A DNA stretch of 64,000 bases, from the NCBI RefSeq assembly GCF_902652985.1, contig NC_047019.1, positions 6,200,001 through 6,264,000 of the forward strand, read 5' to 3'. Position 1 is the stretch's first letter, and each line of letters begins with the position of its first letter. This document shows positions 19,858-45,100 of the stretch, piece after piece. This DNA is from Pecten maximus (Eukaryota). Below the pieces are notes generated by a model, which did not search any database, was not told the origin of the DNA, and was given only the letters and a program-made list of their open reading frames with translations. The translations under genes and the position numbers were made by a program.

Positions 19858-21102
19858 TCATACATCAGTTTCCTCTAATGGTAAATCAAAGACTTCATCT
19901 GAGTGTGATGAAGACAGGCGCCGGTCCGAGTCATCCTCGAGAGAATTAGTACTTGCTTGTGTTCCTTCCGACAAGATTGGATTTGCTCCTTTCAGAAGCA
20001 AACGAGATCTGTGTACAGTTTGTTGTGACTCTGGCAAATTAGCATCACCTTGAAACACTTCCATGCTGTCTTGTAGGTGAGCAATGTCTCTCTGCTCCGT
20101 GGAGCGTTTCATGACGAATCTCGCGGACATATGTAGTAACTGAGATTCCGACTGGGAGCACTTGATGATAGAATCTTCCTCTTGAGGTGAATGCATATCT
20201 GACAGGGAATGTTTTATGCACTCGGTACACACATCGTCTGTGTTAACGTTACAGGTGGGAGGATGGTACGCACCAGTCCCGTGGGGGTAACCTATCCCTC
20301 CAGCAGAGTAATGCAAATTCGGATTACCATACTCATACTGGTTACCGTCAACTGGGGAATGTCGGTTGTAGACCTTGTCCTGGAACTCAGGGGAACCGTT
20401 GCCAACGATATCACAATTATCTTGGTCTGTACTATCACAAAGCAATGGCACAAGCGAATCATTCACACTTTTTGTAGTTTTATCGGCCTCATGGCGAATT
20501 TTGGGAGGACTTTCAATAACTACATCAGTTTTTATATGTATACAATTCCCAATCTGAGGCGTTTTGTTCACCTGGCCGTTGAGATGTTTAGGTTCTGTCA
20601 CAGGAGGGAAATCTCCCACCTTGTTTTTACTCACTGGCGATTGCTGGATAGTCTCCAGAACCTGAGGAATTATGATGGAGCGTCGTTTGTTATCTTTGTT
20701 CAAGCTGCCAATTCGACTCAAAGCACTTCCGACACTAGATATCTCCGATAAAGTCTCTGGACTGGCCAGTGGTGCAGTGATGGGGTCTGTTCCCAGATCT
20801 AGATACAGTTCCACTTTTCCGGGATCGCCTGGATACAGGAAATCCTTATCCAATAGGAACCGGTGTTCCTCTGCTGCATGATCCCAGGAGAAGAGAGGCG
20901 GTAAGGGCTGATGCTTTGGTTTGTATAATGGTAACTGGTTACACATAGGTGCTGTTTTACCAATCGTAAAGTCCTCCTGTACAATCAGTTTGTGGTTAGA
21001 ATTCTCAGATTCTACTGAAGGCGAGCGCTTTTGAAGAAAGGCCTTTCTTTCAGCCTCAGTTAACGTCCGATTTGGTTTTGGAGGTGCCACATTTACCAAA
21101 AC
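19858..21102 (-). CDS. DAGLA: DAGLA terminal exon, 414-aa mostly low-complexity or disordered C-terminal tail ending ETDV-stop
   Basis: ctttgaag| acceptor in frame with the previous exon; long ORF to TGA at 19858-19860. Confidence 0.88.
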   Translation of the reverse strand, partial: VLVNVAPPKPNRTLTEAERKAFLQKRSPSVESENSNHKLIVQEDFTIGKTAPMCNQLPLYKPKHQPLPPLFSWDHAAEEHRFLLDKDFLYPGDPGKVELYLDLGTDPITAPLASPETLSEISSVGSALSRIGSLNKDNKRRSIIIPQVLETIQQSPVSKNKVGDFPPVTEPKHLNGQVNKTPQIGNCIHIKTDVVIESPPKIRHEADKTTKSVNDSLVPLLCDSTDQDNCDIVGNGSPEFQDKVYNRHSPVDGNQYEYGNPNLHYSAGGIGYPHGTGAYHPPTCNVNTDDVCTECIKHSLSDMHSPQEEDSIIKCSQSESQLLHMSARFVMKRSTEQRDIAHLQDSMEVFQGDANLPESQQTVHRSRLLLKGANPILSEGTQASTNSLEDDSDRRLSSSHSDEVFDLPLEETDV

Positions 21103-24100
21103 CTTCAAAGAAAACAGTAAAATAATCAAATACAGTTTTTCTTTAGTAATACATACAAAATGTTATTCAAGCAAGGTATACCATTTTTGATTATTGATAT
21201 AAATATTACTTGCAAGAGAAGTATCATTTAAATAAAAAAAATAACATGTTCTCTTTTATTTTTGATCTGTGATTAGGAAATTTCAAAAAGAAAATTGTGT
21301 TTCATCAATTATTGAATTAGGAAAAACAAAATTTATCACTTGGTTCTCAGGCCATTTTTCAAAATAGATGAGGCAGAGAGGCATTTTTTTTACATTCATT
21401 CTACAAAGCAAAAACGATTCAATAATCTAAATTCATAATCATTTCAAAGCTTGCCTGTAGTGTCATTTATTTAAACATTTTCATGACTTTGGTGAAAGGA
21501 CATGGAGACTCATTTCCCTGATGACAGCAAATGCAGTCTCAGTTTGTTTAATTACTTTCAATAAAATCAACAATGCAGTTTCCTGAGAATCAATTATTTT
21601 TTGGGGTACATGCATTTGAAAATGATTACCTTTTAATTTCTATTTTTAATTAAGTTTCTAAGAAATCTTTCAAAAGAACAAGCTAAAGGAACAGTAATTG
21701 TATATCATTTGAAAGAAATGAAATAAGTAATTTTTGTTAAGATATTTTGCAATCAATAATATGTATTGTTGCTTCTCATAATAGGTAAATGTAATTCTAT
21801 TTTTACCCATGCTTCCCATCACTCAAAAACATCAAATGAAATATGAAAAGGAAGGGGTTTTTAGGATACCACCTTTGAAATCTTCCCCTTGGAAAAAGAA
21901 ATTATTTCACTGATTCACACAGAGAGAAACATTTAAGTTAGTTGGTTGTGAGTGTAACCATTGTCACTCTATAGTGACACACAAATCATTTAAATATTTT
22001 CGGTGCATACTTTCATGGAACTTACAACAGGTTCAATGACAAATTTTAAAGGAAAATGGCTTTGTCATTTCCTCTTAAACAGATACCTTGTCCTAAACAC
22101 ATTGAAGGGACACGTAATTAAGGGGAAAATCACATTTATACCAGGTATTTGTATTAAGGTAAATATGGGGTAAGGTCTTTTTCCTTACACCTTGATCAAA
22201 TGTGATATGCAATGCTTGGTCTTGGGGCAATATGTACAATAATATCTTGATGGGATCTGCTATTTTTTCTTGAACATCAGACCAAAAAAATATCGCTGGG
22301 TCTACCTTCTCCAAGGCATCCATAACATTGTCTGGCATGTGGTCATTGATCATGGTAGGGGAGACGAGAACTTCATCGAAGCTGGTGTTGTGTGCCCAAA
22401 CAGCTTGGAACACAGGCTCCCCAGATCCACACAGACGTTTCCTATAAATAAAAGTCACACCCTACATTTGTTTTCTCCAAAAACGTAACATAAAATAAAA
22501 CCGAAAAGTTCTGGCTTTTTCAGACAGAAAACAACTGTATTCAAAACCATTGGTAGCAATGTTAAATTTGAGAGGAAAGAGGGCAGCTCAACGAAGTAAC
22601 AATCCGGGGTGGCAAAATCCAAGATGGCTGGTGAAACTATAAATACAGGGTTAAATTTGCACTGAAGCCATCCCAAATCATTTTGGACAAAATGAAAATG
22701 ACTTGATTTTTTTCAGGCAGTCAATTTAAATCTCATATAAACAGAGGGGTAAAATTTTACCTGAAAAATACCAAATAGCACAAACCTTCAAATACATGTA
22801 GAAAGATTATAAAAGTTAGGTATAATTATCGTTGTGGCACACTTCTTAGATGACACGCAGTGTATTATGCAACAGGTTTCATATATAAAGTGAAATTATA
22901 CCAATGGCAGCCTTCGAACACTAATGAATCATCACTTATAGAGTTACACTTGTTACTTCTCCATAACTGCCTTACTTTTTCCCTCGAGGGTGACTTCTGA
23001 CCACATGGATAATCTTGCCAGGTGGGTATAGGGGGTGGTGTGTAGATAGACCTATCTGGGAGTCGAGTGGATGGGCAGTGTTGTCTCGCTCTATCTCCAG
23101 CTGTACTTCAGCTGTACTCAGGTTTTCAGTCTCCCCCGTCCCGCAACATAATCCTTTCGCTATAATCTTCCACTGTAAAACATCACAAGTTATACCAATT
23201 ATAACATTTCACATTGTCTAGCATTGTCTAACAATCATGTTCCTTAAAAACAAATACTTCTTAAAACTGTTTGACATGTGACTGAAGAAGACTGCCTGCA
23301 GATGACCCAGCCCGCCTTAAATGTCGTGCCAATGTCCGTTCCAGGGAGTTGCCCGGCCTTGAGAACATACCAAATGGACAGGGTACCAGTCTTACCAGAG
23401 TGGGATACAGGTACTGGTGGCCTCAGATTTTGCCCCCTTCACATCGCCTTAACACAGCTACTGCCATGAAAGGAGACAGAAAACCCATAGCAAACCAAAC
23501 AAAGGCCCATTGGGCCCTAATCCCTTACCTGCTATCCAGTGATCCTATTTATATACATTTTTTGTATTAACATAAGAACAAGTGTATCAGAGACCAGATA
23601 TAGAATCTTAGGGCCTCACACTTATTTGAAAAGATGTCCTTTAAATACTTAGGCCAATCTAACTCTTTCAGACTTAAATCACAGTTTTTGTTATGAAAAA
23701 GAAGTCATGGAAATATTTCAGTCTAATTGACCCATGTGACCTTGACTGAAGGTCAAGGGTCATTCATTCAAACAAACTTGGTAGCCCTTTACCCCATGAT
23801 TCAGACCCAATATCAAGTCCCTGGGCAGGTGAGCTACAAATTGTAGAAAATATTGTTGATAATGTAAAATCCATTGACAAACACTCATTTTACAGCGACA
23901 ATTTAGATTCATTTATCAACACCTCAACAAACCCTGCTAGGCAGCCAGCACAAATATTTTTGGACACAGTCATGAAAACAAAATAATCTGTCAATACAAT
24001 ATTGATTTTAGTTGAGCTCTGGACATTCACGATCAATCTATATTGTTATCCATCCTCACCTTGGGCTGTGTACTATTTTTTATCACATTAATTAAATCCG

Positions 24101-27100
24101 TTCTTAAAACCTCCAACTGGGACAGACCAATTCTGAAATACAAGAAAATCAATATCTTAGTCATCCTAGTTACACATATCAACACAATTATATTTTACAT
24201 CTTATCCACTAAGTTATACTGTTAATTACTAATTTTTTTATTAATTTCATTTAATAATTTCACCAAAAGTGAGTACAATTTCTAAAAGAAACAGCTATAA
24301 TGCCTACAGATGGTGGTCAGTGACTACATCACCAGACGACTTCATACTGTCCAGGACCGATGGAAATAAAATCTCAGTTTGCTTGTGTACATACTGAGTA
24401 CAGTTGCTTTTACTTGGTTACACTGGAGGGTTGACTGATGCAGGTATTTATGACCTGTTTACATAAGAGACCCAATGGGCCTGTAACACACATCTGTTCT
24501 GCAGCTCGTGAAGTGAGGACTTTGTAGGAAGATTTAATTCATGTGAATCTCAAAGGTCATAGACATGAATCTTTTCCTTTTCAGTGACTGTTACATATCT
24601 AATATCATAACTCTCAAGAAATGGTATTGAGGAACAAATCATTTAAAGATTCTAGTTCATTTTACCCCTATAATAGTCTGTTGTATTAGACAAGATGTCA
24701 GAATATACAGGTCTTATTTTAAAGTTATCATCAGACTACAAATTGCAGCATTCTCCAATGACCCACCCAAAGTGGCATCAACACCAATAGTCTGTTCACA
24801 ATGCACTAGCCAGAATCATTCGACCCCTATGAATGTCTATTAATGTATTAGACAGGATGTCAGAATATAATGTGTCAGAATACACAGGTCTTAGTTTAGT
24901 AGTTACCATCAGACTACATAATTGCAGCATTACATTGTATTAGACAGTCTAATGTTGCATATAAATGGTTCAGAGTTTCGATACAAATGCACAGAAGGGA
25001 ATTTCACTTTGTGTTTAATAATAAAATGATCATAACTTACCTTGGAACAACATCCTTCCCTACCACCACAGATGTTATGAAGGACTTGGTTTCTTCAACA
25101 CACACATCACTGTAATACATAACAAATTACTTTGTATTACTGCATTACTCTCCAGGCTTGACAATGAAAAGACATTTGGAGATCCATTTAAATAATTATG
25201 TCTTCAGTCAAAAAAAGGCTTTCCTTTTTATTTTACAACTAGAACTTTCAAGAACCTGAAATTTTAAAGCCTATGTGTTCTTCTACACACTCGTTAAATT
25301 AAAGTTGATGTTACACAACGAGTGGTTGTTGGATATGGAATTTATTTCACACTCATAAGTTATTTTTTTTAAAGACACGAGCTTTAGCGACTTGAATATC
25401 GGCTTGAATCAAAGGGAAACGTGGCCAAGTCTTATTTCGTGTATACAAATAAGGTATACAGGTGACGGCTGGGGCCCAGTGATGTGACGTCATTTGATTA
25501 TTGATGACATCAATGACAATTGCAGCTCGGGTCAAAGTTCAAATTTGTGACCAATCAAAAGACCATAACATATATATATATCCAAGAGTTGGCACATTCA
25601 TACAATGGCTTGAGAGTGGAAAAACACAGGGTATTGTGGTAGAAATGTAAGGTTATATCCCAGTGTACCTGAGCAGTCCTCCAGGAGGAGAGAAAGCATA
25701 GCAGTGGAGAGTAGGGTACTCCTGTCTCAGTAGTATGGCGAGTATGGATGCCGTACCAGCTCCCAGGGAGTGACCTACCAACACTAGGTCATATTTCTGT
25801 GTTCCCCTGTCCTGTAAAACAGACATGAACTAAGTATTTCGGTGTAAGTACCAGTATAACATATTGTGTTATACCTCAATTTTAAAGCATGGTTACAGAC
25901 TCATATTCCGTCAGTACATTGGGATTCTGTGTAACAGGAAACTTTCATTGTTTTTGTGGTTGCTTTGGAACCAAGAATCTAAATACAACAAATATCTGAA
26001 AGCTCTGAACCACGAAAGAACTAGAACTGTCGCCAGGATGGCTGACTAATACCACCGCAATCTGCATGAGTCAATGGTGAATTGGAACTGTTAACTAGAG
26101 GCTAACTAAGATAACCCATGCAAGCCAATATTTCTGAAATTTAGAATGTCTGAAATATGTGTTGTTAACACTAAAGAGAATTCAGTGACCAGTTGCCATA
26201 GCAACCATAATTTTGAGATAAAGAAAGTGGCATGCACATCTACACATGGTCCTCTATATTTGTGTGAAGTTTCATTGAAATCAACCCTTCGGTTTAGGAG
26301 GAGTTGTCCAGACAAACTTAAAGTTATGGTTCTTATCGGAAAACCTGTATATAGTGACCAGTTGCCATAGCAACCATAATTTTGAGAAAAAGAAAATGGC
26401 ATGCGCATCTACACATGGTCCTCTATATTTGTGTGAAGTTTCATTAAAATCGGCCCTTCGGTTTAGGAGGAGTTGTCCGGACAAACTTAAAAACTTAAAA
26501 GACGGACGGACAACCTGATTCCAGTATACCCCCCCTAACCTAAAAACATTCCATGTTGTACAGTAAATGAAGCCATTGAAAAGAGTAGTGCAAAATGTGG
26601 ATGCATAAAAAAATATAACATACTTCTTTCATTTTACCACTTGTAGATTTAATGGCATACAAACTGATTTCCTCTTAAATGTACAATGAAACCCGATTTT
26701 ACTGACAACTGACTTTAACGAACCTGATTTTACTGACAACTGACTTTAACAACATCCTGTAACATCTGGCTGATCCAACAAAATGCCAACACTGACTACG
26801 GACTGCCCAACACACTGTCATATCCAACACATTGACTTTGTCCCGTACAGTGTTGGAAAAGTCAGGATCTACTGCATTCCCATTGTATGAGATTTTTATT
26901 AAAGGTAATTCTGTAGATTATGTAGGCTTATCACTTTATGTTTTATATAATAACTTACTAGATCCATCCCAAAAGCTTTTGCCAAGATACGATCATCCTT
27001 CAGTTTCTTCTGAATGTACACTGCAGCTTGAACCATTCCCTGTCAAAAACACAAAATAAATCATCAAGTGGATGTCACTTCGACATTTTCAAAAACCCTG

Positions 27101-30100
27101 GAATCAAATAGTTGCATAAGAATCATATCAGCTTTCTAGAAACAGAGGATCATACAAAGGAACTGTAATATTTTAGCAATGAAAGAAGTTGTATAGGCTG
27201 CATGAAATCCATAGATTATGAAAATTATTTTCCTGTCTGAATTTTTACAAGAGCCTGTGTCTGTATGAACAGGAAATATAATAAACTGTATGTTTTTACT
27301 TTTTATTTGTATCTGATACCAACCTTATGTCCGACCCATTCTTCCTTAACAGGATTTAGTGGGAGTGTCTCTGCATCAGCCTTCAGATCTGTCAGCACAT
27401 CCTGTAAATACACAGACTACATCTACACACAGATCTGTCAGTACATCCTGTAAATACACAGACAACATCTACACACAGATCTGTCAGTACATCCTGTAAA
27501 TACACAGACAACATCTACAAACAGATCTGTCAGTACATCCTGTAAATACACAGACTACATCTACACACAGATCTGTCAGTACATCCTGTAAATACACAGA
27601 CAACATCTACAAACAGATCTGTCAGTGTGTCCTGTAAATACAGACTACATCTACACACAGATCTGTCAGTACATCCTGTAAATACAGACTACATCTACAA
27701 ACAGATCTGTCAGTACATCCTGTAAATACACAGACTACATCTACACACAGATCTGTCAGTACATCCTGTAAATACACAGACTACATCTACAAACAGATCT
27801 GTCAGTGTGTCCTGTAAATACACAGACAACATCTACACACAGATCTGTCAGTACATCCTGTAAATACACAGACAACATCTACACACAGATCTGTCAGTGT
27901 GTCCTGTAAATACACAGACAACATCTACAAACAGATCTGTCAGTACATCCTGTAAATACACAGACAACATCTACACACAGATCTGTCAGTTTGTCCTGTA
28001 AATACACAGACAACATCTACACACAGATCTGTCAGTACGTCCTGTAAATACACAGACAACATCTACACACAGATCTGTCAGTACATCCTGTAAATACACA
28101 GACTACATCTACACACAGATCTGTCAGTACGTCCTGTAAATACACAGACAACATCTACAAACAGATCTGTCAGTGTGTCCTGTAAATACACAGACTACAT
28201 ATACACACAGATCTGTCAGTACGTCCTGTAAATACAGACTACATATACACACAGATCTGTCAGTACGTCCTGTAAATACACAGACAACATCTACACACAG
28301 ATCTGTCAGTACATCCTGTAAATACACAGACAACATCTACACACAGATCTGTCAGTACATCCTGTAAATACACAGACAACATCTACACACAGATCTGTCA
28401 GTACATCCTGTAAATACACAGACTATATCTACACACAGATCTGTCAGTGTGTCCTGTAAATACACAGACTATATCTACACACAGATCTGTCAGTACATCC
28501 TGTAAATACACAGACAACATCTACAAACAGATCTGTCAGTGTGTCCTGTAAATACACAGACTACATCTACACACAGATCTGTCAGTACATCCTGTAAATA
28601 CACAGACAACATCTACACACAGATCTGTCAGTACATCCTGTAAATACACAGACAACATCTACACACAGATCTGTCAGTACATCCTGTAAATACACAGACA
28701 ACATCTACAAACAGATCTGTCAGTGTGTCCTGTAAATACACAGACTACATCTACACACAGATCTGTCAGTGTGTCCTGTAAATACACAGACTACATCTAC
28801 AAACAGATCTGTCAGTGTGTCCTGTAAATACACAGACTACATCTACACACAGATCTGTCAGTACATCCTGTAAATACACAGACTACATCTACAAACAGAT
28901 CTGTCAGTACATCCTGTAAATACACAGACAACATCTACACACAGATCTGTCAGTACATCCTGTAAATACACAGACTACATCTACACACTGATCTGTCAGT
29001 ACATCCTGTAAATACACAGACTACATCTACACACAGATCTGTCAGTGTGTCCTGTAAATACACAGACAACATCTACAAACAGATCTGTCAGTACATCCTG
29101 TAAATACACAGACTACATCTACACACTGATCTGTCAGTGTGTCCTGTAAATACACAGACTACATCTACAAACAGATCTGTCAGTACATCCTGTAAATACA
29201 CAGACAACATCTACACACAGATCTGTCAGTACATCCTGTAAATACACAGACTACATCTACACACAGATCTGTCAGTACATCCTGTAAATACACAGACTAC
29301 ATCTACAAACAGATCTGTCAGTACATCCTGTAAATACACAGATAACATCTACACACAGATCTGTCAGTGTGTCCTGTAAATACACAGACTACATCTACAA
29401 ACAGATCTGTCAGTACATCCTGTAAATACACAGACTACATCTACACACAGATCTGTCAGTACATCCTGTAAATACACAGACAACATCTACAAACAGATCT
29501 GTCAGTACATCCTGTAAATACACAGACTACATCTACACACAGATCTGTCAGTGTGTCCTGTAAATACACAGACAATATCTACACACAGATCTGTCAGTGT
29601 GTCCTGTAAATACACAGACTACATCTACAAACAGATCTGTCAGTGTGTCCTGTAAATACACAGACTACATCTACAAACAGATCTGTCAGTACATCCTGTA
29701 AATACACAGACTACATCTACACACAGATCTGTCAGTGTGTCCTGTAAATACACAGACTACATCTACAAACAGATCTGTCAGTACATCCTGTAAATACACA
29801 GACTACATCTACAAACAGATCTGTCAGTGTGTCCTGTAAATACACAGACTACATCTACAAACAGATCTGTCAGTACATCCTGTAAATACACAGACTACAT
29901 CTACACACAGATCTGTCAGTACATCCTGTAAATACACAGACAACATCTACAAACAGATCTGTCAGTACATCCTGTAAATACACAGACAACATCTACAAAC
30001 AGATCTGTCAGTGTGTCCTGTAAATACACAGACAACATCTACACACAGATCTGTCAAAACATCCTGTAAATACACAGACTACATCTACACACAGATCTGT

Positions 30101-33100
30101 CAGTACATCCTGTAAATACACAGACTACATCTACACACAGATCTGTCAGTGTGTCCTGTAAATACACAGACAATATCTACACACAGATCTGTCAGTGTGT
30201 CCTGTAAATACACAGACTACATCTACAAACAGATCTGTCAGTGTGTCCTGTAAATACACAGACAACATCTACACACAGATCTGTCAGTACATCCTGTAAA
30301 TACACAGACTACATCTACACACAAATATGTCAGTACATCCTGTAAATACACAGACTACATCTACAAACAGATCTGTCAGTACATCCTGTAAATACACAGA
30401 CTACATCTACACACAGATCTGTCAGTACATCCTGTAAATACACAGACTACATCTACAAACAGATCTGTCAGTACATCCTGTAAATACACAGACTACATCT
30501 ACACACTGATCTGTCAGTACATCCTGTAAATACACAGACTACATCTACAAACAGATCTGTCAATACATCCTGTAAATACACAGACAACATCTACAAACAG
30601 ATCTGTCAGTGTGTCCTGTAAATACACAGACAACATCTACACACAGATCTGTCAGTGTGTCCTGTAAATACACAGACTACATCTACACACAGATCTGTCA
30701 GTACATCCTGTAAATACACAGACTACATCTACACACAGATCTGTCAGTACATCCTGTAAATACACAGACTACATCTACACACAGATCTGTCAGTACATCC
30801 TGTAAATACACAGACTACATCTACACACAGATCTGTCAGTACATCCTGTAAATACACAGACTACATCTACACACAGATCTGTCAGTACATCCTGTAAATA
30901 CACAGACTACATCTACACACAGATCTGTCAGTACATCCTGTAAATACACAGACTACATCTACACACAGATCTGTCAGTACATCCTGTAAATACACAGACT
31001 ACATCTACACACAGATCTGTCAGTGTGTCCTGTAAATACACAGACTACATCTACACACAGATCTGTCAGTACATCCTGTAAATACACAGACTACATCTAC
31101 ACACAGATCTGTCAGTACATCCTGTAAATACACAGACTACATCTACACACAGATCTGTCAGTGTGTCCTGTAAATACACAGACTACATCTACACACAGAT
31201 CTGTCAGTACATCCTGTAAATACACAGACTACATCTACACACAGATCTGTCAGTACATCCTGTAAATACACAGACAACATCTACAAACAGATCTGTCAGT
31301 ACATCCTGTAAATACACAGACAACATCTACACACAGATCTGTCAGTACATCCTGTAAATACACAGACAACATCTACACACAGATCTGTCAGTACATCCTG
31401 TAAATACACAGACAACATCTACACACAGATCTGTCAGTACATCCTGTAAATACACAGACTACATCTACACACAGATCTGTCAGTACATCCTGTAAATACA
31501 CAGACAACATCTACACACAGATCTGTCAGTACATCCTGTAAATACACAGACAACATCTACACACAGATCTGTCAGTACATCCTGTAAATACACAGACTAC
31601 ATCTACACACAGATCTGTCAGTACATCCTGTAAATACACAGACAACATCTACACACAGATCTGTCAGTGTGTCCTGTAAATACACAGACTACATCTACAC
31701 ACAGATCTGTCAGTACATCCTGTAAATACACAGACTACATCTACACACAGATCTGTCAGTACATCCTGTAAATACACAGACTACATCTACACACAGATCT
31801 GTCAGTAGATCCTGTAAATACACAGACTACATCTACACACAGATCTGTCAGTACATCCTGTAAATACACAGACTATCATCTACACACAGATCTGTCAGTA
31901 CATCCTGTAAATACACAGACTAACATCTACACACAATCTGTCAGTACATCCTGTAAATACACAGACACATCTACACACAGATCTGTCAGTACATCCTGTA
32001 AATACACAGACTACATCTACACACAGATCTGTCAGTGTGTCCTGTAAATACACAGACTACATCTACACACAGATCTGTCAGTACATCCTGTAAATACAGA
32101 CTACATCTACACACAGATCTGTCAGTACATCCTGTAAATACACAGACAACATCTACACACAGATCTGTCAGTACATCCTGTAAATACACAGACTACATCT
32201 ACACACAGATCTGTCAGTACATCCTGTAATACACAGACTACATCTACACACATGATCCTGTCAGTACATCCTGTAAATACACAGACTACATCTACACACA
32301 GATCTGTCAGTACATCCTGTAAATACACAGACAACATCTACACACAGATCTGTCAGTACATCCTGTAAATACACAGACAACATCTACACACAGATCTGTC
32401 AGTACATCCTGTAAATACACAGACTACATCTACACACAGATCTGTCAGTACATCCTGTAAATACACAGACAACATCTACACACAGATCTGTCAGTGTGTC
32501 CTGTAAATACACAGACTACATCTACACACAGATCTGTCAGTACATCCTGTAAATACACAGACTACATCTACACACAGATCTGTCAGTACATCCTGTAAAT
32601 ACACAGACAACATCTACACACAGATCTGTCAGTACATCCTGTAAATACACAGACAACATCTACACACAGATCTGTCAGTACATCCTGTAAATACACAGAC
32701 TACATCTACACACAGATCTGTCAGTACATCCTGTAAATACACAGACTACATCTACACACAGATCTGTCAGTACATCCTGTAAATACAGACTACATCTACA
32801 CACAGATCTGTCAGTACATCCTGTAAATACACAGACTACATCTACACACAGATCTGTCAGTGTGTCCTGTAAATACACAGACTACATCTACACACAGATC
32901 TGTCAGTGTGTCCTGTAAATACACAGACAACATCTACACACTAGATCTGTCAGTACATCCTGTAAATACACAGACAACATCTACACACTAATCTGTCAGT
33001 ACATCCTGTAAATACACAGACTACATCTACACACTGATCTGTCAGTACATCCTGTAAATACACAGACAACATCTACAAACAGATCTGTCAGTACATCCTG

Positions 33101-36100
33101 TAAATACACAGACAACATCTACAAACAGATCTGTCAGTACATCCTGTAAATACACAGACTACATCTACACACAGATCTGTCAGTACATCCTGTAAATACA
33201 CAGACTACATCTACACACTGATCTGTCAGTACATCCTGTATATAAACAGACTACATCTACACACATATCTGTCAGTACATCCTGTATATACACAGACTAC
33301 ATCTACACACAGATCTGTCAGTACATCCTGTAAATACACAGACTACATCTACACACAGATCTGTCAGTACATCCTGTAATACACAGACAACATCTACACA
33401 CAGATCTGTCAGTACATCCTGTAAATACACAGACTACATCTACACACAGATCTGTCAGTACATCCTGTAAATACACAGACTACATCTACACACAGATCTG
33501 TCAGTACATCCTGTAAATACACAGACTACATCTACACACTGATCTGTCAGTACGTCCTGTAAATACACAGACTACATCTACACACAGATCTGTCAGTACA
33601 TCCTGTAAATACACAGACAACATCTACACACAGATCTGTCAGTGTGTCCTGTAAATACACAGACTACATCTACACACAGATCTGTCAGTACATCCTGTAA
33701 ATACACAGACTACATCTACACACAGATCTGTCAGTACATCCTGTAAATACACAGACAACATCTACACACAGATCTGTCAGTGTGTCCTGTAAATACACAG
33801 ACTACATCTACACACAGATCTGTCAGTACATCCTGTAAATACACAGACTACATCTACACACAGATCTGTCAGTACATCCTGTAAATACACAGACTACATC
33901 TACACACAGATCTGTCAGTACATCCTGTAAATACACAGACTACATCTACACACAGATCTGTCAGTACATCCTGTAAATACACAGACTACATCTACACACA
34001 GATCTGTCAGTACGTCCTGTAAATACACAGACTACATCTACACACAGATCTGTCAGTACGTCCTGTAAATACACAGACTACATCTACACACAGATCTGTC
34101 AGTACATCCTGTAAATACACAGACTACATCTACACACAGATCTGTCAGTACATCCTGTAAATACACAGACTACATCTACACACAGATCTGTCAGTACATC
34201 CTGTAAATACACAGACTACATCTACACACAGATCTGTCAGTACATCCTGTAAATACACAGACAACATCTACACACAGATCTGTCAGTACATCCTGTAAAT
34301 ACACAGACTACATCTACACACAGATCTGTCAGTACATCCTGTAAATACACAGACTACATCTACAAACAGATCTGTCAGTACATCATGTAAATACACAGAC
34401 AACATCTACACACAGATCTGTCAGTACATCCTGTAAATACACAGACTACATCTACACACAGATCTGTGAGTGTGTCCTGTAAATACACAGACTACATCTA
34501 CAAACAGATCTGTCAGTGTGTCCTGTAAATACACAGACTACATCTACAAACAGATCTGTCAGTACGTCCTGTAAATACAGACAACATCTACACACAGATC
34601 TGTCAGTACATCCTGTAAATACACAGACTACATCTACACACAAATATGTCAGTACGTCCTGTAAATACACAGACTACATCTACACAGAGGTTAGTGTACA
34701 ATACATTCAACTAAAGATGTTTATTCAATTTAATTCTGTTACTCCAAGTAATATAGTCAAAGTAGTTAGCAAGACAGATCAAATTCACAAATTCACAAAA
34801 AGGTACAAGACATAATGGCAAGCTAGGTCTTTAAATTTCCATGGCAAGAATGCACATGAACAAAATTTCAAGCCTCTAATTGCAAAAAATAAGAAAATAA
34901 AAAAATTAATTTTTTTTTTTTTTTTTTTAAATCATAGACCTTCTGATAAACAATTAAAACAACCTAATTTAAGATGTTCTTTCTGGCGGCCTTGTTGGTT
35001 ACTTATGAACAATTAAAAAGTTTTACTAATAAATAGTGTCAAAATTAAATGTTCTTATTCAAGAATCTCCTTCCCAGAGATTTTAATTAATTGGCAAGTA
35101 CAGTAAGTGACCGTGTTGTATTATTATCCAGTGCAAGTTAGTTCTCTACTCTACTACCTATTTTTTGTTATGAACGCTACAATTTTCCCAAGGCTGATGA
35201 ATTGATAATTTCAATTTTAATAGTGTTGTGTAATGCATGTGCACCTACACTCCATGCATTCTCTTTCTGAAAACCTTTATTTAAAACTGCACCCTAGAAC
35301 ACCACATTATCCACAATTTTTTACCAGATTTATGATTATGAGGGTTCACAATACAATTTTAACTCTCCGAAGTAATTGAAAGACTGGTGCATTTTGTAAT
35401 TACACATGCATCGTGTGAAATCAATTAGTCTATTTCAGAGGAATTTTCTAAAATAGATGGTGCAGACTGCATACTTCAATGTGTTGGATCAAGAGAGTTC
35501 GGTATTAGCTAAGCCCCTATTTGTGGTTTTTGAATGAGAATCAACATGCCAAAGTTTGAAAAAAATCCAGACTTAATAGCCATATATGGCAATCCTTCAG
35601 ACTTGTTTGTACCCAAGAAATTGTGTGGCAAATTTTTTACATGTTCAAAGGTATACTCTATCCCTTAGCAGTGTAGACTTTAAGCGGTATATAATTATGT
35701 AATAAATAAATTGAATTATCCATACCGTTCAAAGTGCAAGCTTGCTATATCAGCGAGCAAAATTTCTATTTTCCTCTATTTAATCAAATTAGATATTGAT
35801 TTCAAGCATAAAGGCTTGCCAATAATACAATGAAAGATATCATAAACTGCATGAGGATTGTACATGAGTGACTATGTCATATGGAATTTATTGAACGATC
35901 AGAGGAATAAATTCAATACGATATAGCCACAAGTATAAGATTCAGTTTATCACATAACTCATAATATATGGGTATAATTAAAAAACTCTGAAATTAATTT
36001 CTAGATATAAGAGAGGAGAATTTTGACTCGGGCATAATGTTTTTCTCTAAAGAGAATGATCACAATATGTGTACTTTCAAAGTAAGACATCAACACCAAT

Positions 36101-39100
36101 CAAAAATGGTATTAGTGCCGTGTCATATGCTTACTGGTTTTTGGGTAAGATTTAAAATAAACAATTTGACCTCTGACCATCTGTTTGCCTCCCACTCCCC
36201 TAATATCTCTGAATTATAAACAGAAAATCTATCAGAAACAATGGGTCATCAATCATATTGGCCTGGCCTTGTCTGTGATAATTGATTCAGAGCACCTCAC
36301 TGGTTTGCTGTGCTCTTACCTGAAGTGACAGGGTCCCTCTCACACAGATGACAACCTTCTTGTGTCCATGGTCCAAAGCCACGTAGAAAGGCGTCTCCCC
36401 GATCTGAAAGTAAACAAGACGAGTCTGAGCTGATTACTCACGAATGCTGCCTGGTATTGATGCGATGGAATGCAACATGGCATACCATCCTTTACTTAAG
36501 CATGAAGATGTGGGTGACTGTTGGGAAGCAATCGTATTAACGGTGTAAATTAAATTTAATGTAGTCAACGAGACATGTAATGAAATCAACTCGTGATCAC
36601 TTATAAATAACAGTTTTTAATAGAATTATACAAATTAATGATCAGACTCAAAATAAGAAAAAACGAGATGAAGAATCACATGTCACAATTAAAAACAACA
36701 GTGTATTTCAAACAGCAAGCAATTTGATCCGATATTGTAGGAGTGAAACAAATGACGGAAAATGTATCACAATTCAGAACACACTCTAAATTGTACCTAA
36801 TGCCTCATAAAATCACTTTGGAATGATTATTGTGATGTTAACCAAATATATCGGAAATGTGACAGTGTTAAAATCTATTTAATTTTAATGTGATATCACA
36901 ATCAGAATCGTCATTCCAAGCACATATTAGGTGAACTAAGAAAGGTAGGGGCTTGGCCGTGTATAAGCCAGCGGGAATCTATTATGCTAGGGTAGGTTTG
37001 GTGCTTTTAGTACTATGTATCGACAGGAGCTTAATTGCTGTGGTGAGCATTGTGTTACAGGCTGTAATTAAACAGGCTATTGCAGTATAACTAAACCAGG
37101 CTATGTCGTATTGTTACCACAACCAATTACTAGGAACGTTTCCTGCTATCAAGTAGAGAGAATATTTTACGATCATCAATAAACCAATACTTTCACGGCT
37201 CACAGTACTTGAGACAAAGAATATTGTATGATCATTAACGAACACTTTGACCGAGGAACAAGTTGTCTATACGGGGAGGGTTAAGGTCAGGAGATCGGGA
37301 CAGTTATTGTAATAAAGTCTGACATAAACACACAGCCTTCAAAATCAATACAATGGCTTCGGTGACGTGTCCTTAGCTGTCACACTCAGAGATATCACCA
37401 CACACACCAACAGAGCAGGTTTAATACTGCTTTGCGGAACAAAACCTGATAAACTCTCCATGCTTCACCGATTTCTAAATTGATATCTTTTACATATAAC
37501 CAGGAAATAAGAAAGCATGGAAGCTGTCTTTTTTTTTCTAATAGAAATTATTACTCATGACATTGACACATTTGAAGTCATAAACAGCATCTATCAATAT
37601 TTTACACAATGAGATTTTGTTTTTTATGGGCTTAACATCCTCGCAACAGCCAGGGTCATTTGAGGACAGACACACAATGAGTATTGTATTTGCCATTAAA
37701 AAATGGTTAAAGAGGGGGGTGCTTATTAAGGTGACTTTTATAATCTAAAAATAAGAAGTCGGTAAGAAAAATTGGAAGTATTATGACCAGATATTTAAGA
37801 TTTACCAGCAGTCTCTAAGCTTTGTTCACCAAACTGAAGTCTCTACATGTAAAATTTAAGTAAGATGACTTATTTTTAAGTTGTTTCCCGATTACGCGGG
37901 GCGTTTATACCAATTTCTCCACCGGAAAAAGGAGAGGCACTTAAAGGGACATGGGTGCTTATTGCAGCGAATACGGTATGAATTTCACATGAAAAAAAAT
38001 TCACGTGAAGGAATATTGCCTGTGTCTAAATCTAAAAAATTCCTGCATGAAAAAGTACGGGGGAGATGTTCCAGAAGCATTTAATCCTTACTTGAAGGTA
38101 ACTTTTTTACCTATTAAGATGTTCCTGTCAACAAAATCCAAAGCAAAATCATATCCAGATACACATACATATTGACATCATGAATGTTATAAACCTCTCT
38201 TTTTCAAAGAGGCTGTGTAATAACCAAAACTCCATCACGCGGAATAAGAGACAGTGAAATGCTTTTACATTAATCAAGCTGTGGACAAATTGGTTCTGGC
38301 AAAGGACCGGCTATAAAACTGTGCTGCGACACTAGAGATGGTAAATAATAGGAACAGCTAGAGGGGAAGTGACACAGCCTCTATACCTCTCAACTGTAAC
38401 ACTGTGAGACACGAAACACTCCCAACTGTAACACTGTGAGACACGAAACACACCCAACTGTAACACTGTGAGACACGAAACACTCCCAACTGTAACACTG
38501 TGAGACGCGAAACACTCCCAACTGTAACACTGTGAGACACGAAACACTCCCAACTGTAACACTGTGAGACACGAAACACTCCCAACTGTAACACTGTGAG
38601 ACGTGAAACACTCCCAACTGTAACATTGTGAGATGTGAAACACTCCCAACTGTAACACGTACTGTGAGACACGAAACACTCCCAACTGTAACACTGTGAG
38701 ACACGAAACACTCTCAACTGTAACACTGTGAGATGTGGAACACTCCGAACTGTAACACTGTGAGACGCGAAACACTCCCAACTGTAACACTGTGAGACAC
38801 GAAACACTCCCAACTGTAACACTGTGAGACACGAAACACTCCCAACTGTAACACTGTGAGACACAAAACACTCCCAACTGTAACACTGTGAGACGTGAAA
38901 CACTCCCAACTGTAACACTGTGAGACACAAAACACTCCCAACTGTAACACTGTGAGACCCGAAACACTCCCAACTGTAACACTGTGAGACGCGAAACACT
39001 CCCAACTGTAACACTGTGAGACGTGAAACACTCACAACTGTAACACTATGAGATGCGAAACACTCCCAACTGTAACACTGTGAGACACGAAACACTCCCA

Positions 39101-42100
39101 ACTGTAACACTGTGAGACACGAAACACTCCCAACTGTAACACTGTGAGACAGGAAACACTCCCAACTGTAACAATGTGAGACACGAAACACTCCCAACTG
39201 TAACACTGTGAGACACGAAACACTCCCAACTGTAACACTGTGAGACGCGAAACACTCCCAACTGTGAGACGCGAAACACTCCAAACTGTAACACTGTGAG
39301 ACGTGAAACACTCCAAACTGTAACACTGTGAGACGTGAAACACTCTCAACTGTAACACTGTGAGATGTGAAATACTCCCAACTGTAACACTGTGAGACGC
39401 GAAACACTCCCAACTGTAACACTGTGAGACGCGAAACACTCCCAACTGTAACACTGTGAGATGTGAAACACTCCCAATTGTAACATTGTGAGACGCGAAA
39501 CACTCCCAACTGTAACACTGTGAGACGTGAAACACTCCCAACTGTAACACTGTGAGACACGAAACACTCCCAACTGTAACACTGTGAGACAGGAAACACT
39601 CCCAACTGTAACACTGTGAGACGCGAAACACTCCCAACTGTAACACTGTGAGACACGAAACACTCCGAACTGTAACACTGTGAGACACGAAACACTCCAA
39701 ACTGTAACACTGTGAGACACGAAACACTCCCAACTATAACACTGTGAGACTCGAAACACTCCCAACTGTAACACTGTGAGACCCGAAACACTCCCAACTG
39801 TAACACTGTGAGACCCGAAACACTCCCAACTGTAACACTGTGAGATATGAAACACTCCCAACTGTAACACTGCGAGACATGAAACACTCCCAACTGTAAC
39901 ACTGTGAGACACGAAACACTCCCAACTGTAACACTGTGAGACGCGAAACACTCCCAACTGTAACACTGTGAGATGTGAAACACTCCCAACTGTAACACTG
40001 TGAGACGCGAAACACTCTGAACTGTAACACTGTGAGACGCGAAACACTCCCAACTGTAACACGCGAAACACTCCCAACTGTAACACTGTGAGACTCGAAA
40101 CACTCCCAACTGTAGCACTGTGAGACCCGAAACACTCCCAACTGTAACACTGTGAGACCCGAAACACTCCCAACTGTAACACTGTGAGACATGAAACACT
40201 CCCAACTGTAACACTGCAAGACATGAAACACTCCCAACTGTAACACTGTGAGACACGAAACACTCCCAACTGTAACACTGTGAGACGCGAAACACTCCCA
40301 ACTGTAACACTGTGAGACGCGAAACACTCCGAACTGTAACACTGTGAGACGCGAAACACTCCCAACTGTAACACGCGAAACACTCCCAACTGTAACACTG
40401 TGAGACGCGAAACACTCCCAACTGTAACACTGTGAGACAGGAAACACTCCCAACTGTAACACTGTGAGACGCGAAACACTCCCAACTGTAACACTGTGAG
40501 ATGCGAAACACTCCCAACTATAACACTGTGAGACGCGAAACACTCCCAACTATAACACTGTGAGATGTGAAACACTCCCAACTGTAACACTGTGAGACGC
40601 GAAACACTCCCAACTATAACACTGTGAGACGCGAAACACTAACGTTTTCATCAGACAACTTCCCCTTCAACTATTGTATTCAGTGGTCGGGTGGCACAGT
40701 GGTAACACACTTGCATTTCACCTAGGCAGCTGGGGTTCGTTTCCCCGATCGGACATGAAAAGGTATGAGGTCACCTGCCCTGGAACCATGAAGGTTTTAC
40801 TGGGGTTCTCAAGTATCCTCCCTTTCCTTCCACAGCAAGACCCCTTGCACATTTTAATCCGGGCCAACAAGCATATAAATATATATATAAGTTTTTTCGC
40901 AATGGTTGTAAAATATATAAACTTTTCTTTTTTTACCGTATTCAAAAGGCAAACATAGGATTTTTCTTCAACTAGCATTTACCTATCAAATACTGATGGG
41001 AAATGTCTGCTGTGTATGCTTTTTACCCCTCTAATGACCAAATGTCTCACTTTTGAAATGTCTTTTCTGTTTATGCCTGTTCCCCTCTAATGACCAAGAG
41101 ACTTTTGAAATGTCTTTTCTGCAGCAACAGTATGAAGACATAAAATATGTGTCACTTTGCCATAGAAGAATTATGGCTATCAGATCCTTTTCATGTCACA
41201 GCAACTTTGAGCACTAGCTTCTATATTTTGAAAACTTGAAAATTTCTATACTTCAGGATAAGTTGATTATTGATGAACTGGAGTTAAAAACTCCATTGAA
41301 GTAGATATGATGTACCCGTGGTCAAAAGTGTTGAAATAATTTTCTATTTATAATAAAAGTGACCTTCACCTATGACCTTCAAACGAGAAAAGCAAACCCA
41401 AGGATGCAATTTAAGTGAGGACACAGTGTATGGAGTTCGAGGTTGATAAGCTCAAAGAAATTCAATTATACACATATACATTCTCTTCAATGTGTGTGTA
41501 ATGTGTTAATGTGTGCGTAATGTGTAAATGTGTGCATAATGTGTTAATGCGTGCATAATGTGTGTCTCCCTGGAAATATGCATTATTTCACAACATTTAA
41601 AATGGAGTCAGACAACAAAAGTTGACAGCAATGTCAATGGATGTATACACACATACTGTTTGGCAACTGTCACCATTAAAGCACATTTCAAACAAAGCCA
41701 GGCCACAAACAGACAGGCATAAGTCGCCGCCAGTCACGTAAATATTTACCTCTACATGGTAGGTGACATAAGCAATGTCGGTTTCTTTCAGGCCACTCAG
41801 CTTCAGCAGTGCCACAAAGTTACAGTGGCAACAGTTATCGTCAATCAGGTCAGCATCCTTACTGAAGGACGCCCCACAGGCATGGCAGCAGCAGCACCTA
41901 GGGTACATCAAATACATGAGTAGTTTAGGATTGATTTTCTGATGGTGCAAAATTTTCTATCTTGAAAACTGATTAAAAGAGAGAAAGTGTTATACTGAAA
42001 CATTCATTCAAGCATCTCAATGTTCACAAAATTGCAAATCTACTTTGAAGTCTTAAAACGATTGTAACAAGCAATCGCAGAGTTGGATCTTGGTAAACAG

Positions 42101-45100
42101 CACTGAATGATTCCATGTCATTTTTTTTTTTTTTTTTTACATCTTTTCTGTACTTTTCTCCTCTTTCCACTTAATTATCCATTCTATTGACAAGTTGTAT
42201 TGACCAAATATGCCTGTATTTCATTTCTTGAATGGTTCCGTAATTAAACTTTTTCAATTACATAGGGGAAGAGAAGAAACTACGAATGTATTCTGGGAAA
42301 GATCAAATATGCAAAGAACAATCTATGAAATAGCAATAACAAAATTTTACCATCAAAATCCAAGATGCCTGCCAGTCAGCCATCTTGCATTTCTGATCAG
42401 TCTTAAGTTTATATACATCATGTATATGCACAAATGCCAGGCTTGAATAAATGGGAATTACAAAGGGTTGAAACCTAACATTGTCAAAAATCCATGATGC
42501 CTGCCTGTCAGCCATTTTTTATCTATTCTACCCCCATTAGTTTCATTATTGGACATGCAAAAGGCAAAGGAACCCTGTACATGATATTTGAGAAAAATTC
42601 ATGATGTATTTTTTATGTTATACTCCAACGGTTTCAGTTGAATTGAATTCCCTGGGGATTGCTTCATCATAAATTCAATATCATCTTCACCATTTCTTAA
42701 ATGATTAATGATTTAAAATTATCAAACTGAGAGTGAAATATGTATCACAGCATTCACCAAAATAGGTAAAATTTGGTAAAAATATTGCAAAGTAAAATAT
42801 TGTTTTATCACAATCTATAATCACCTTTAAGGTCTGTACAGAGTCTCAATAAATTTTGAAAGATTTTTGTTGCAGTTAACCCATGACTGATCATAAATTC
42901 CCATCAACCAGAAATAATCATAACAGGGTTTAATACAGTAGGGAAATCTATTCCAAACAAAATAATGTTCACATGCGGGGTTGGTGAGGCAATAGGGGAC
43001 ACTATACAAGGGTACTACTCTTACTGTAAATGTATATATTTTAGGGGTAATCTCATTTTAGCGATTTTTTGCTCAGTAAGAATTTCGCTAAATTTTTTTA
43101 TTGTGCTAATGGTTGTTTATCTACAATGTTTTACATGACAAGCATTGTCGTTGCTCTAATTCATCATTCCACTAATCTGCTATGATTTGCTTTTATGCGA
43201 AAATTTGAGCACACCAAAATAAATCTGTTTACAGTAATCAAATGAACACTTTAAATACACGATATGTTATTCCAACACGGAACAGTATTTACCGAAGACT
43301 TGGAAGCATTTTACAGAGACCTGTCCCCGTGTTCATCATCATGAATGCAGGCCATCCATAGGCAGCCAGGGCAAAACGCATGTAATGAACTACCAGTTTG
43401 TACTCTTCCATAACCTCCGGTTGGCCCAGCTGTAGGAACTCGGTCTGTGGGGTGATTGCACGCCCCGATAGGTACTGATAAACATCATTACTGCCCTGAA
43501 AAACAAAAATACATTTTGTACATACATCGAACAACTATCACTGACCAATAGTTTCAGAATACACAGGATATTTGGAACCACACAACTGATTGTACTTGTA
43601 AAAATTCATTCAGTGGGACCTAGCCTATATAGTTCATGAAAGTGTCAAAATGTCTTCAGTTGTGTGATGTCATCATTGCTTACCTTTCTAATGTTTCAAG
43701 GCTTTACACCTATGTGCCAAAATATACAGAACAATAGGGTTTGTATTGTGCCCTTGTTTCTTTGTCCCCTGACCATGAAAATAATACTGTCCCTTACTCG
43801 AGTCTGTGGTGGCCATCTTATTGACCAAGGTACAACTTGACAACACCTGCCCCATAACTTTGATCACAAAGTTTTGTCTCTCAAAGCCGAGTGATGCTTC
43901 AGATCAACTTTAGTTACAATTCCTTCACCTGTACTGAAGGAGAAGTCTTTAGAAATATACCTTGCTACTTATTGTGTCATATGCTTCCTGACTGGGATTT
44001 CTCCTTATTTACAGCATTATAAAGGTGTACCTGCAGAGGTGTTGTACTAAAGACCTTGGCTACTATGGTAAGATAATTCCTGTACTGGGCAGTGTAATCA
44101 CTTATGTAGATAGTACAACATAATGAATCAGCTCTAAATAAACCAATGTAACAAACAAGTGCTGTTGTACCATGCCTTAAACTCTGCCTACACAATTCTT
44201 CACTTAGCTTTGTTTACGATTTAATTGTTCCGTTAAGCGTTACAAAATCAATTTGATGTGGATGTGTCTATTTCCAATTCCAGCTTTACAGTTTTGTACC
44301 TTATTGACATATATTTGCCAACAACTTCCATATGTCCGCACCAATCAAAACAAACATTACTTAAAGTAACTAATATTGATTGTATATGCCCCAATTCCTT
44401 CTACAAGCCATATCAATTTGATTTGGCTGTAACCATAACCTACATAGCCAGGGTATTGGAACTGGAAGAAAATTCGTCTACTATTATTTCAGATGTATTG
44501 TTTGCTACAAATTAATTATTTCCAGTCATAGCAAGTCCCAAGCTACAAAAACACATTCAGAAACAAATCTCAAGCAGGCATTTATCCAGAGTCTACTAGA
44601 TTGTTCTCTGTATACACCAGCCAAATCAGTGAAGATACTATCAACTTCAAGACAATGGCCTCCAAAACAAAATTAAGTGAAAGAAAATCACCACCGAAAC
44701 AATGAGCACAAAGACATTATTTATGGTCTCCAAAACACCAATAACCACTAGAGCATGTTTGTCAGTGGTCTCCAAAACACCAATCATTGCCAGGGCATGT
44801 TTGTGGTCTCCAAAACACCAATCATTGCCAGGGCATGTTTGTGGTCTCCAAAACACCAATCATTGCCAGGGCATGTTTGTGGTCTCCAAAACACCAATCA
44901 TTGCCAGGACATGTTTGTGGTCTCCAAAACACCAATCATTGCCAGGACATGTTTGTGGTCTCCAAAACACCAATCATTGCCAGGGCATGTTTATGTCTCC
45001 AAAACACCAATCATTGCCAGGGCATGTTTGTGGTCTCCAAAACACCAATCATTGCCAGGACATGTTTGTTGTCTCCAAAACACCAATCATTGCCAGGGCA

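What the first reader, a model, noticed from the sequence alone, without database searches (positions are those of the whole stretch)
27324..34696. 7.3-kb satellite made of about 159 copies of DAGLA's own 3' splice site and exon start: an array of decoy acceptors
Seen: on the coding strand each 46-nt unit reads TGTGTAGATGTAGTCTGTGTATTTACAG|GATGTACTGACAGATCTG, i.e. the last 28 nt of the intron plus the first 6 codons (DVLTDL) of the lipase-domain exon 27401-27324. Only the last unit runs on into unique exon sequence (KADAETLP...) and a donor. The spliceosome therefore meets about 158 near-identical CAG acceptors first. Using a decoy 1 or 2 units upstream shifts the frame (+46, +92 nt). Going 3 or more canonical units upstream hits a TGA (...TAC AGG ATG TAC TGA). 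Essentially every decoy should give a truncated or NMD-targeted product lacking the catalytic Ser. Inference: the gene survives either by strict exon definition with the donor at 27323, or the array acts as a copy-number-tunable attenuator of 2-AG synthase expression. It is also a clear case of a satellite arising from a splice junction.
Basis: partly seen in the sequence, partly recalled or inferred. Interest (0 to 1): 0.9.

Follow-up and report, generated by a model that had tools for sequence, protein, structure and literature searches.

The report
Splice-acceptor minisatellite in scallop DAGL-alpha intron
In the king scallop, a 46-base piece spanning the intron/exon border of the diacylglycerol lipase alpha gene has been copied about 159 times into a 7.3-kb array that ends at the real exon. 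This repeat type is already known (a "mirage" minisatellite) and is most likely a tolerated accident, not a splicing control.

Summary
Window 27384-34686 is a 46-bp tandem array of 159 copies at 94% match. Each unit is the last 28 nt of the intron plus the first 18 nt (DVLTDL) of exon 27401-27324 of a minus-strand gene. The genome is Pecten maximus, and the gene is RefSeq's "sn1-specific diacylglycerol lipase alpha-like".

158 intron-resident units keep an ACAG|G acceptor. Using any of them would give an in-frame stop within 68 codons. The junction 30-mer appears confined to this locus.

The orthologous junction is single-copy in Mizuhopecten, Ylistrum and Argopecten, and all share the same exon start. 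So the array arose from the splice junction in the Pecten lineage.

The class is known: amphioxus "mirages" (including 3'-junction arrays in a globin gene) and human F7, CBS, IFI6, LMNB2 and PDGFA. In those, the authentic site, sometimes with the nearest one or two copies, is used. This scan already noted several such arrays elsewhere in this genome.

The RefSeq protein model uses the last copy. The "tunable attenuator" idea has no support. About 39% of this gene's intron DNA is minisatellite, so one array seeded on a junction is not surprising.

Verdict: a real, large new member of a known kind.

The parts
36320..36403 (-). Upstream exon ([28 protein letters not shown]), 84 nt, phase 0-0. Its donor GT is at 36319-36318.
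   Evidence: Sequence read. tblastn of the Pecten maximus RefSeq protein P0150.
34687..36319 (-). Unique 5' part of the intron (1,633 nt). It shows patchy 72-76% similarity to the orthologous Mizuhopecten and Argopecten introns.
   Evidence: blastn; sequence.
34690..34696 (-). CACTAAC, a branch-point-like motif 32 nt upstream of the first (5'-most) copy of the acceptor. It is probably the ancestral branch site of the intron, and it now lies 7.3 kb from the authentic acceptor.
   Evidence: Read directly. Aligned with CTAAT/TTAAC-type motifs at the same place in other scallops. Branch-site function is inferred, not shown.
27384..34686 (-). 46-bp minisatellite, 159 copies. Unit = last 28 nt of the intron + first 18 nt of the exon. 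It holds 158 intron-resident ACAG|G decoy acceptors (first at 34658, nearest at 27447). The last 18 nt (27401-27384) are the real exon start.
27437..27441 (-). CTGAC (fits yUnAy) in the exon-derived part of the penultimate unit, branch A 36 nt upstream of the authentic AG. The same motif sits 36 nt upstream of the AG in 143 units. It overlaps a 10-nt palindrome, ACAGATCTGT, present in the consensus unit.
   Evidence: 158 CTRAY motifs; commonest distance 36. (predicted RNA pairing between palindromes of neighbouring units, z = -3.47). Use as a branch site is inferred.
27324..27401 (-). Authentic exon ([26 protein letters not shown]), 78 nt, phase 0-0. Acceptor AG at 27403-27402; donor GT at 27323-27322.
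   Evidence: The same peptide is in the RefSeq P. maximus protein and its orthologues.
25671..25811 (-). Downstream exon carrying the GHSLG catalytic-serine motif of the class-3 lipase domain.
   Evidence: Pfam PF01764 Lipase_3, E 1.8e-08. tblastn 100% to P0150.
19861..21105 (-). Last exon (C-terminal tail, 415 aa), 100% identical to the Pecten maximus protein XP_033739669.1.

Best explanation
This is a lineage-specific "mirage" minisatellite: a tandem array whose terminal unit spans a real exon-intron boundary.

Origin. In an ancestor of Pecten maximus, after the split from the Mizuhopecten, Ylistrum and Argopecten lineages, a segment of about 44-46 bp was duplicated in tandem. The segment covered the last ~28 nt of the intron and the first 18 nt of the DVLTDL exon of the single-copy DAGL-alpha gene. 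A shared TCTG lies at both breakpoints, which suggests slippage at that microhomology. The duplicate was then amplified to about 159 copies by the slippage or unequal exchange that filled the other introns of this gene with large minisatellites.

Geometry. Every extra copy lies upstream of the real exon, inside the intron, so the coding sequence is untouched.

Splicing (inferred). The mRNA is made by joining the donor at 36319 to the last copy (27401). Only that copy is followed by genuine exon sequence and by a usable donor 78 nt downstream, which is exon definition. The array itself has almost no donor-like sites. Each unit carries a branch-point-like CTGAC 36 nt before the next AG, so the authentic acceptor can take its branch site from the penultimate unit although the ancestral one is now 7.3 kb away.

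Prediction from published cases. Only the one or two decoys nearest the exon (27447, 27493) might be used at a low level. They would give +46 and +92 nt frameshifted transcripts with premature stops.

Overall, the array is a tolerated, neutral or slightly costly by-product, not a regulatory device.

Shown: the array, its unit, its locus specificity, the single junction in relatives, and the stop codons. Inferred: the duplication mechanism, branch-site use, exon definition and the low use of decoys.
For: - Array and unit.
- Gene identity: last exon 100% identical over 415 aa to XP_033739669.1, [quoted passage not shown]. Lipase_3 domain. Orthologues named DAGL-alpha across molluscs and arthropods. 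G000 has exactly the size and scaffold count of the published P. maximus assembly.
- The RefSeq model reads ...RGTLSLQ|[14 protein letters not shown]..., so it uses the last copy.
- The exon start is conserved and single-copy in relatives: Mizuhopecten (intron 1.78 kb), Ylistrum (3.97 kb) and Argopecten (acceptor side only). None has a 46-bp array.
- Locus specificity: the junction 30-mer with up to 3 mismatches has 153 hits, all on one strand. The 100 listed all lie inside the array, and 153 does not exceed the 159 units.
- The 5' flank plus the first unit aligns with the end of the orthologous intron, and TCTG lies at both breakpoints.
- All 158 decoys lead to stops.
- Donor-poor array: 1183 of 1188 GT sites match at most 5 of 9 consensus positions.
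- Natural mosaic of unit variants; the longest exact internal repeat is 351 nt.
- Other large intronic minisatellites in the same gene: 38387-40640 and 44720-48919.
- Published precedent: amphioxus mirages, including the 3' end of an intron plus the 5' part of exon 2 in BflGb6, with regular splicing by RT-PCR (PMC3087553). Human F7, CBS, IFI6, LMNB2 and PDGFA (PMC1557585).
Against: - There is no RNA evidence from this species. Use of the last copy rests on a RefSeq gene model, which may lean on homology.
- The five decoys nearest the exon lie 124-308 nt from the real donor. Four of them differ from the authentic site at only 1-3 of 46 positions. Exon definition alone does not explain why they would stay silent.
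- Two UAGs lie between the proposed CTGAC branch site and the CAG, so the real branch point may be elsewhere.
- The copy number comes from a wtdbg2 assembly of noisy PacBio reads (PMC7191990) and was not checked against reads.
Confidence: 0.75

Rival explanations
1. Regulatory attenuator. The spliceosome uses in-array acceptors at an appreciable rate, the products are degraded by nonsense-mediated decay, and array length tunes DAGL-alpha (2-AG synthase) output between individuals or tissues.
For: - All 158 decoys are near-identical to the real site and all lead to premature stops.
- The 5'-most decoy keeps the ancestral branch-site-like motif and is transcribed 7.3 kb before the real acceptor.
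- In human IFI6 and CBS, the two pseudo-sites nearest the exon are used (PMC1557585).
- CBS VNTR length has been associated with enzyme activity (title of the reference cited in PMC1557585).
Against: - There are no expression or polymorphism data.
- The RefSeq record found for this gene carries no isoform label, and the model uses the last copy.
- Published mirage arrays do not disturb regular splicing (PMC3087553).
- The array is absent from three related genera whose enzyme is nearly identical.
- Unrelated minisatellites of similar size fill other introns of the same gene, so no function is needed to explain it.
Confidence: 0.08
2. Assembly artefact or strongly inflated length. The real allele has far fewer units, and the 7.3 kb results from mis-assembly of noisy long reads over a repeat.
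For: The assembly was made with wtdbg2 from PacBio Sequel reads at 65.9x and then polished (PMC7191990). Tandem arrays are error-prone in such assemblies. No read-level check was possible.
Against: - The array has no gap.
- It is a structured mosaic of at least 42 unit variants with local clustering, not a stutter of identical copies. The longest exact internal repeat is 351 nt.
- Both flanks are unique and collinear with the orthologous intron.
- Arrays of 2-4 kb are assembled in the same gene, and a 5.4-kb array is assembled on another scaffold.
- Mean read length of about 10 kb (75.8 Gb in 7.25 million reads) can span 7.3 kb.
Confidence: 0.1
3. The array belongs to a dispersed repeat family, for example the internal minisatellite of a mobile element, that landed next to the exon. 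Its resemblance to the exon start would then be secondary.
For: A 47-bp, 117-copy array on another scaffold (C15:23225675-23231124) is about 72% similar over the whole unit. The best cyclic alignment score is 5.6 sd above shuffles.
Against: - The 18 exon-derived bases encode DVLTDL, which is conserved in DAGL-alpha across the molluscan orthologues read here and present at the same exon start in four scallop genera. So the exon is the source, not the recipient.
- The intron-derived part aligns with the end of the orthologous intron.
- The junction 30-mer was found nowhere else among the listed hits.
- With very many tandem arrays in the genome, one 72% look-alike is within reach of chance.
Confidence: 0.03

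Closest known systems
Amphioxus "mirage" minisatellites (Adh3; globin genes BflGb6 and BflGb9), as described in PMC3087553
   Same: Tandem duplications of an intron-exon boundary. BflGb6 repeats the 3' end of an intron plus the 5' part of the next exon, the same geometry as here. The copies carry AG/GT signals, RT-PCR shows regular splicing, and the arrays are unstable in length.
   Different: Amphioxus arrays have 3-6 units of 150-160 bp (10-72 bp in Adh3). Here there are about 159 units of 46 bp (7.3 kb), in a mollusc. Splicing and length polymorphism were not tested here.
Human F7 intron 7 37-bp VNTR (PMC1557585)
   Same: A minisatellite whose terminal unit spans an exon-intron boundary, so identical pseudo splice sites follow the real one. 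Only the copy next to the exon is used, although the pseudo-sites are functional.
   Different: It reiterates the 5' splice site (donor) 5-9 times. Here the 3' splice site (acceptor) is reiterated about 159 times, so the mechanism shown for F7 (5'-to-3' scanning for the donor) cannot simply be carried over.
Human IFI6 (6-16), CBS intron 13, LMNB2 and PDGFA junction minisatellites (summarised in PMC1557585)
   Same: Reiterated splice junctions inside introns: 25 pseudo-sites in IFI6, 15-20 repeats in CBS. Either only the authentic site is used, or it is used together with the two nearest pseudo-sites.
   Different: All are donor-side arrays and much shorter. For IFI6 and CBS, use of pseudo-sites is documented; here it is only predicted.
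Other junction minisatellites already noted by this scan in the same genome (CDK14, HERC1 and a neuropeptide-receptor gene)
   Same: Same genome and same architecture, including acceptor-side arrays of about 49 and about 240 copies. The same reading (tolerated mirage arrays) was given.
   Different: These are unchecked AI notes on other loci and were not re-tested here. This locus is a different gene with an unrelated unit.

Membership tests
Mirage / splice-junction minisatellite | Head-to-tail tandem array with a minisatellite-size unit | tested here: met
   Period 46, 159 copies, 94% matches.
Mirage / splice-junction minisatellite | The terminal unit spans an authentic exon-intron boundary, so the unit is intron end plus exon start | tested here: met
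   The last unit continues into exon 27401-27324. That exon is part of the RefSeq P. maximus protein and its orthologues.
Mirage / splice-junction minisatellite | The splice-site consensus is reiterated in the intron-resident copies | tested here: met
   158 decoy ACAG|G sites. 52 differ from the real site at 1 of 46 positions.
Mirage / splice-junction minisatellite | The exon part is the source: a secondary, lineage-specific duplication of a pre-existing junction | tested here: met
   Single junction with the same exon start in Mizuhopecten, Ylistrum and Argopecten.
Mirage / splice-junction minisatellite | Regular mRNA uses the authentic copy | tested here: inconclusive
   The RefSeq protein model uses the last copy. 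No RNA reads or transcript contigs could be obtained.
Mirage / splice-junction minisatellite | Length instability or polymorphism between alleles | not testable with these tools
sn1-specific diacylglycerol lipase alpha (DAGL-alpha / inaE) | Class-3 lipase domain with a GXSXG catalytic serine | tested here: met
   PF01764, E 1.8e-08, on the exon holding GHSLG.
sn1-specific diacylglycerol lipase alpha (DAGL-alpha / inaE) | Full-length orthology to proteins named DAGL-alpha, including the long C-terminal tail | tested here: met
   All 14 exons in the window match P0150 and P0038. Top hits are named diacylglycerol lipase-alpha or inaE across protostomes. There is one locus in the genome plus a distant paralogue on C1.
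sn1-specific diacylglycerol lipase alpha (DAGL-alpha / inaE) | Enzyme activity (2-arachidonoylglycerol synthesis) | not testable with these tools
   Inferred from family membership only.

The most novel reading that the evidence does not exclude
Decoy acceptors in the array are used at a measurable rate. Because the array is a length-polymorphic VNTR, it would then set individual or tissue-specific DAGL-alpha output through nonsense-mediated decay. More broadly, the king scallop genome would carry so many large acceptor-side junction arrays that it offers a natural genome-wide experiment on 3' splice-site choice, possibly with a seeding bias toward splice junctions.
Probability: 0.08. Interest if true: 0.7.

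Novelty: new member of a known kind. Interest (0 to 1): 0.3.

Why it matters
Arrays that repeat a splice site give natural tests of how the spliceosome picks one site among identical ones. Human F7 was used in this way for donor sites. Acceptor-side cases are rare in the literature and small. This array offers 158 near-perfect competitors, all giving out-of-frame products, in a conserved single-copy neuronal enzyme gene. It would therefore be a stringent natural model for 3' splice-site choice, exon definition and kinetic competition.

It also warns annotators and read mappers. Splice-aware aligners can place junction reads on any unit, and gene predictors can mis-model such introns. The practical importance is modest, because the kind is known and appears common in this genome.

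Tried and rejected
There is no RNA-seq or long-read evidence.
- Protein atlas on the last exon gave only weak, unrelated hits.
- The search for homologous proteins with an in-array open frame (32881-32678) found nothing, which is uninformative.
- The look-up of encoding contigs for the P. maximus protein found nothing on record.
- A full-length search with P0150 found no transcript-derived P. maximus protein.
- Paralogous or mirage status of the 47-bp C15 array: its flanks show no exon-like sequence, and the similarity is borderline once the number of arrays in the genome is considered.
- RNA structure as the discriminator between decoys and the real site: the array RNA is predicted to be more structured than shuffles (z = -3.47). 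The same palindrome pairing is available to the last unit, so this explains nothing specific.
Exons were searched by reference, and full-length comparisons used public proteins returned by the tools.
Full report
**Observation**

Tandem Repeats Finder reports a single array at window 27384-34686: period 46, 159.0 copies, 94% matches, no indels. On the minus (coding) strand I count 159 ACAG|G sites. 145 of the 158 spacings are exactly 46 nt.

The last copy alone continues into unique sequence coding [26 protein letters not shown] (27401-27324). It is followed by AAG|GTTGGT. The upstream exon ends at 36320, with GTAAGA at 36319.

Simulating use of each in-array acceptor shows that all 158 run into an in-frame stop within 68 codons. 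133 of them stop at codon 33. One and two units upstream give +46 and +92 nt.

**What gene and what genome**

The exon at 25811-25671 holds GHSLG and matches Pfam Lipase_3. A profile-free search with the last exon found a 943-aa protein, 93% identical. It is named diacylglycerol lipase-alpha-like in Argopecten irradians.

The 90% cluster of the Mizuhopecten orthologue contains XP_033739669.1, [quoted passage not shown]. That protein is 100% identical to the window's last exon over 415 aa and matches all 14 exons in the window. The genome handle has 918,306,378 bases in 3,983 contigs. Those are exactly the figures published for the king scallop assembly (PMC7191990).

The gene is single-copy. 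Only a distant paralogue lies on another scaffold. Best hits across molluscs and arthropods are named DAGL-alpha or inaE.

The RefSeq model reads ...VRGTLSLQ|[14 protein letters not shown]..., so it joins 36320 to 27401, the last copy.

**Origin**

The junction 30-mer with up to 3 mismatches occurs 153 times in the genome, all on one strand. The 100 listed places all lie inside the array, and the total does not exceed the number of units. A 138-nt probe found only this array plus one 72%-similar 47-bp array on scaffold C15.

I fetched the orthologous loci of three other scallop genera.
- Mizuhopecten yessoensis: the intron between RGTLSLQ and DVLTDL is 1.78 kb, with no large tandem array and no gap.
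- Ylistrum balloti: the intron is 3.97 kb with no array.
- Argopecten irradians: the acceptor is single, with an unrelated 27-bp array ending 190 nt upstream. The upstream exon is not found in that assembly, so only the acceptor side is comparable.

All four species share the exon start GATGT[A/G]CTGACAGA[T/C]CT[G/T]. DVLTDLKA is also kept in oyster and abalone orthologues. Hence the exon part of the unit is ancestral, and the array was made from the junction in the Pecten lineage.

The 5' flank of the array plus the first half-unit aligns with the end of the orthologous introns. That stretch includes a branch-site-like CACTAAC (34696-34690), 32 nt before the first copy of the AG. TCTG occurs at both ends of the duplicated segment, which fits slippage at a microhomology (read; inference).

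**Is it a credible array?**

It has no gap. It consists of at least 42 unit variants arranged in a locally clustered mosaic. Its longest exact internal repeat is 351 nt. This is what a natural minisatellite looks like, not a stutter.

The assembly was built from 65.9x PacBio reads averaging about 10 kb, which can span 7.3 kb.

**How it most likely works**

Local acceptor signals cannot tell the real site from the decoys. 52 decoys differ at 1 of 46 positions (-28..+18), and 36 differ at 2. What differs lies downstream: real exon sequence and a donor at +79.

The array is almost devoid of donor-like sites. 1183 of 1188 GT sites match at most 5 of 9 consensus positions, while this gene's real donors match 6-9. 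Under exon definition, therefore, decoys more than about 300 nt upstream have no partner donor.

The ancestral branch-site-like motif is now 7.3 kb away. However, each unit carries CTGAC 36 nt before the next AG (143 units at exactly 36). The penultimate unit can thus supply a branch site for the real acceptor. This is inference, and two UAGs lie in between.

Each consensus unit also holds the 10-nt palindrome ACAGATCTGT, overlapping that motif. The array RNA is predicted to pair neighbouring units (z = -3.47), but this does not single out the last copy.

The five nearest decoys (124-308 nt from the donor) remain plausible competitors. By analogy with IFI6 and CBS, where the two nearest pseudo-sites are used (PMC1557585), I predict low-level +46 and +92 nt isoforms with premature stops.

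**Comparison with what is known**

[quoted passage not shown] One array, in globin BflGb6, is made of the 3' end of an intron plus the 5' part of exon 2. RT-PCR shows normal splicing, and haplotypes differ in length (PMC3087553).

Human F7 intron 7, CBS intron 13, IFI6, LMNB2 and PDGFA are donor-side examples (PMC1557585).

This scan's own earlier notes list several such arrays in this same genome: CDK14, HERC1 and a neuropeptide-receptor gene, including acceptor-side arrays of about 49 and about 240 copies. I reached the mirage literature independently, and before reading those notes. I did not re-test them.

In this window, tandem arrays make up about 15.2 kb of roughly 39 kb of intron DNA. 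With 27 junctions in 42 kb, a randomly seeded 46-bp duplication hits a junction about 3% of the time. One hit among the seven or so arrays of this gene is therefore unremarkable (my estimate).

**Verdict**

The structure is real as assembled and derives from the gene's own 3' splice junction. It is a large new member of a known kind. The regulatory reading is unsupported but not excluded, and RNA and long-read checks remain to be done.

Exons were searched by reference, and full-length comparisons used public proteins returned by the tools.

Noticed in passing
window 38387-40640: A 32-bp minisatellite of 71 copies (92% match) in the intron between exons 41899-41747 and 36403-36320. It does not touch a splice site.
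   Followed up: partly
window 44720-48919: A 38-bp minisatellite of 110 copies (94% match) in the intron between exons 50060-49914 and 43504-43292. Together with the other arrays, about 39% of this gene's intron DNA in the window is tandem repeat.
   Followed up: partly
L011 2675-8124 (G000:C15:23225675-23231124): A 47-bp array of 117 copies whose unit is about 72% similar to the DAGL unit over its whole length (5.6 sd above shuffled units). No exon-like flank was seen. Distant kinship or chance was not resolved. A 33-bp array of 53 copies lies just upstream (L011 1-1704).
   Followed up: partly
L012 (Argopecten irradians CM084264.1), between 39825 and 55996: The RefSeq model XP_069107342.1 (943 aa) skips three exons of the lipase region. 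Two of them (aa 269-337 and 384-414 of the Pecten protein) are not found by tblastn in this array-rich stretch. This points to an assembly or annotation defect, or a real loss.
   Followed up: partly
window 18551-19050: A 500-base run of N (assembly gap or masked) about 800 nt downstream of the gene's stop codon, presumably in or near the 3' UTR. Left untouched.
   Followed up: no
L012 54675-55806: In Argopecten, an unrelated 27-bp array of 42 copies ends 190 nt upstream of the orthologous acceptor. The same intron has therefore gained different minisatellites independently in different scallop lineages.
   Followed up: no
G000:C1:6697575-6714106: A distant paralogue of the lipase: 33% identity in the transmembrane part and 64% in the catalytic exon. 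It is possibly the DAGL-beta-like gene.
   Followed up: no
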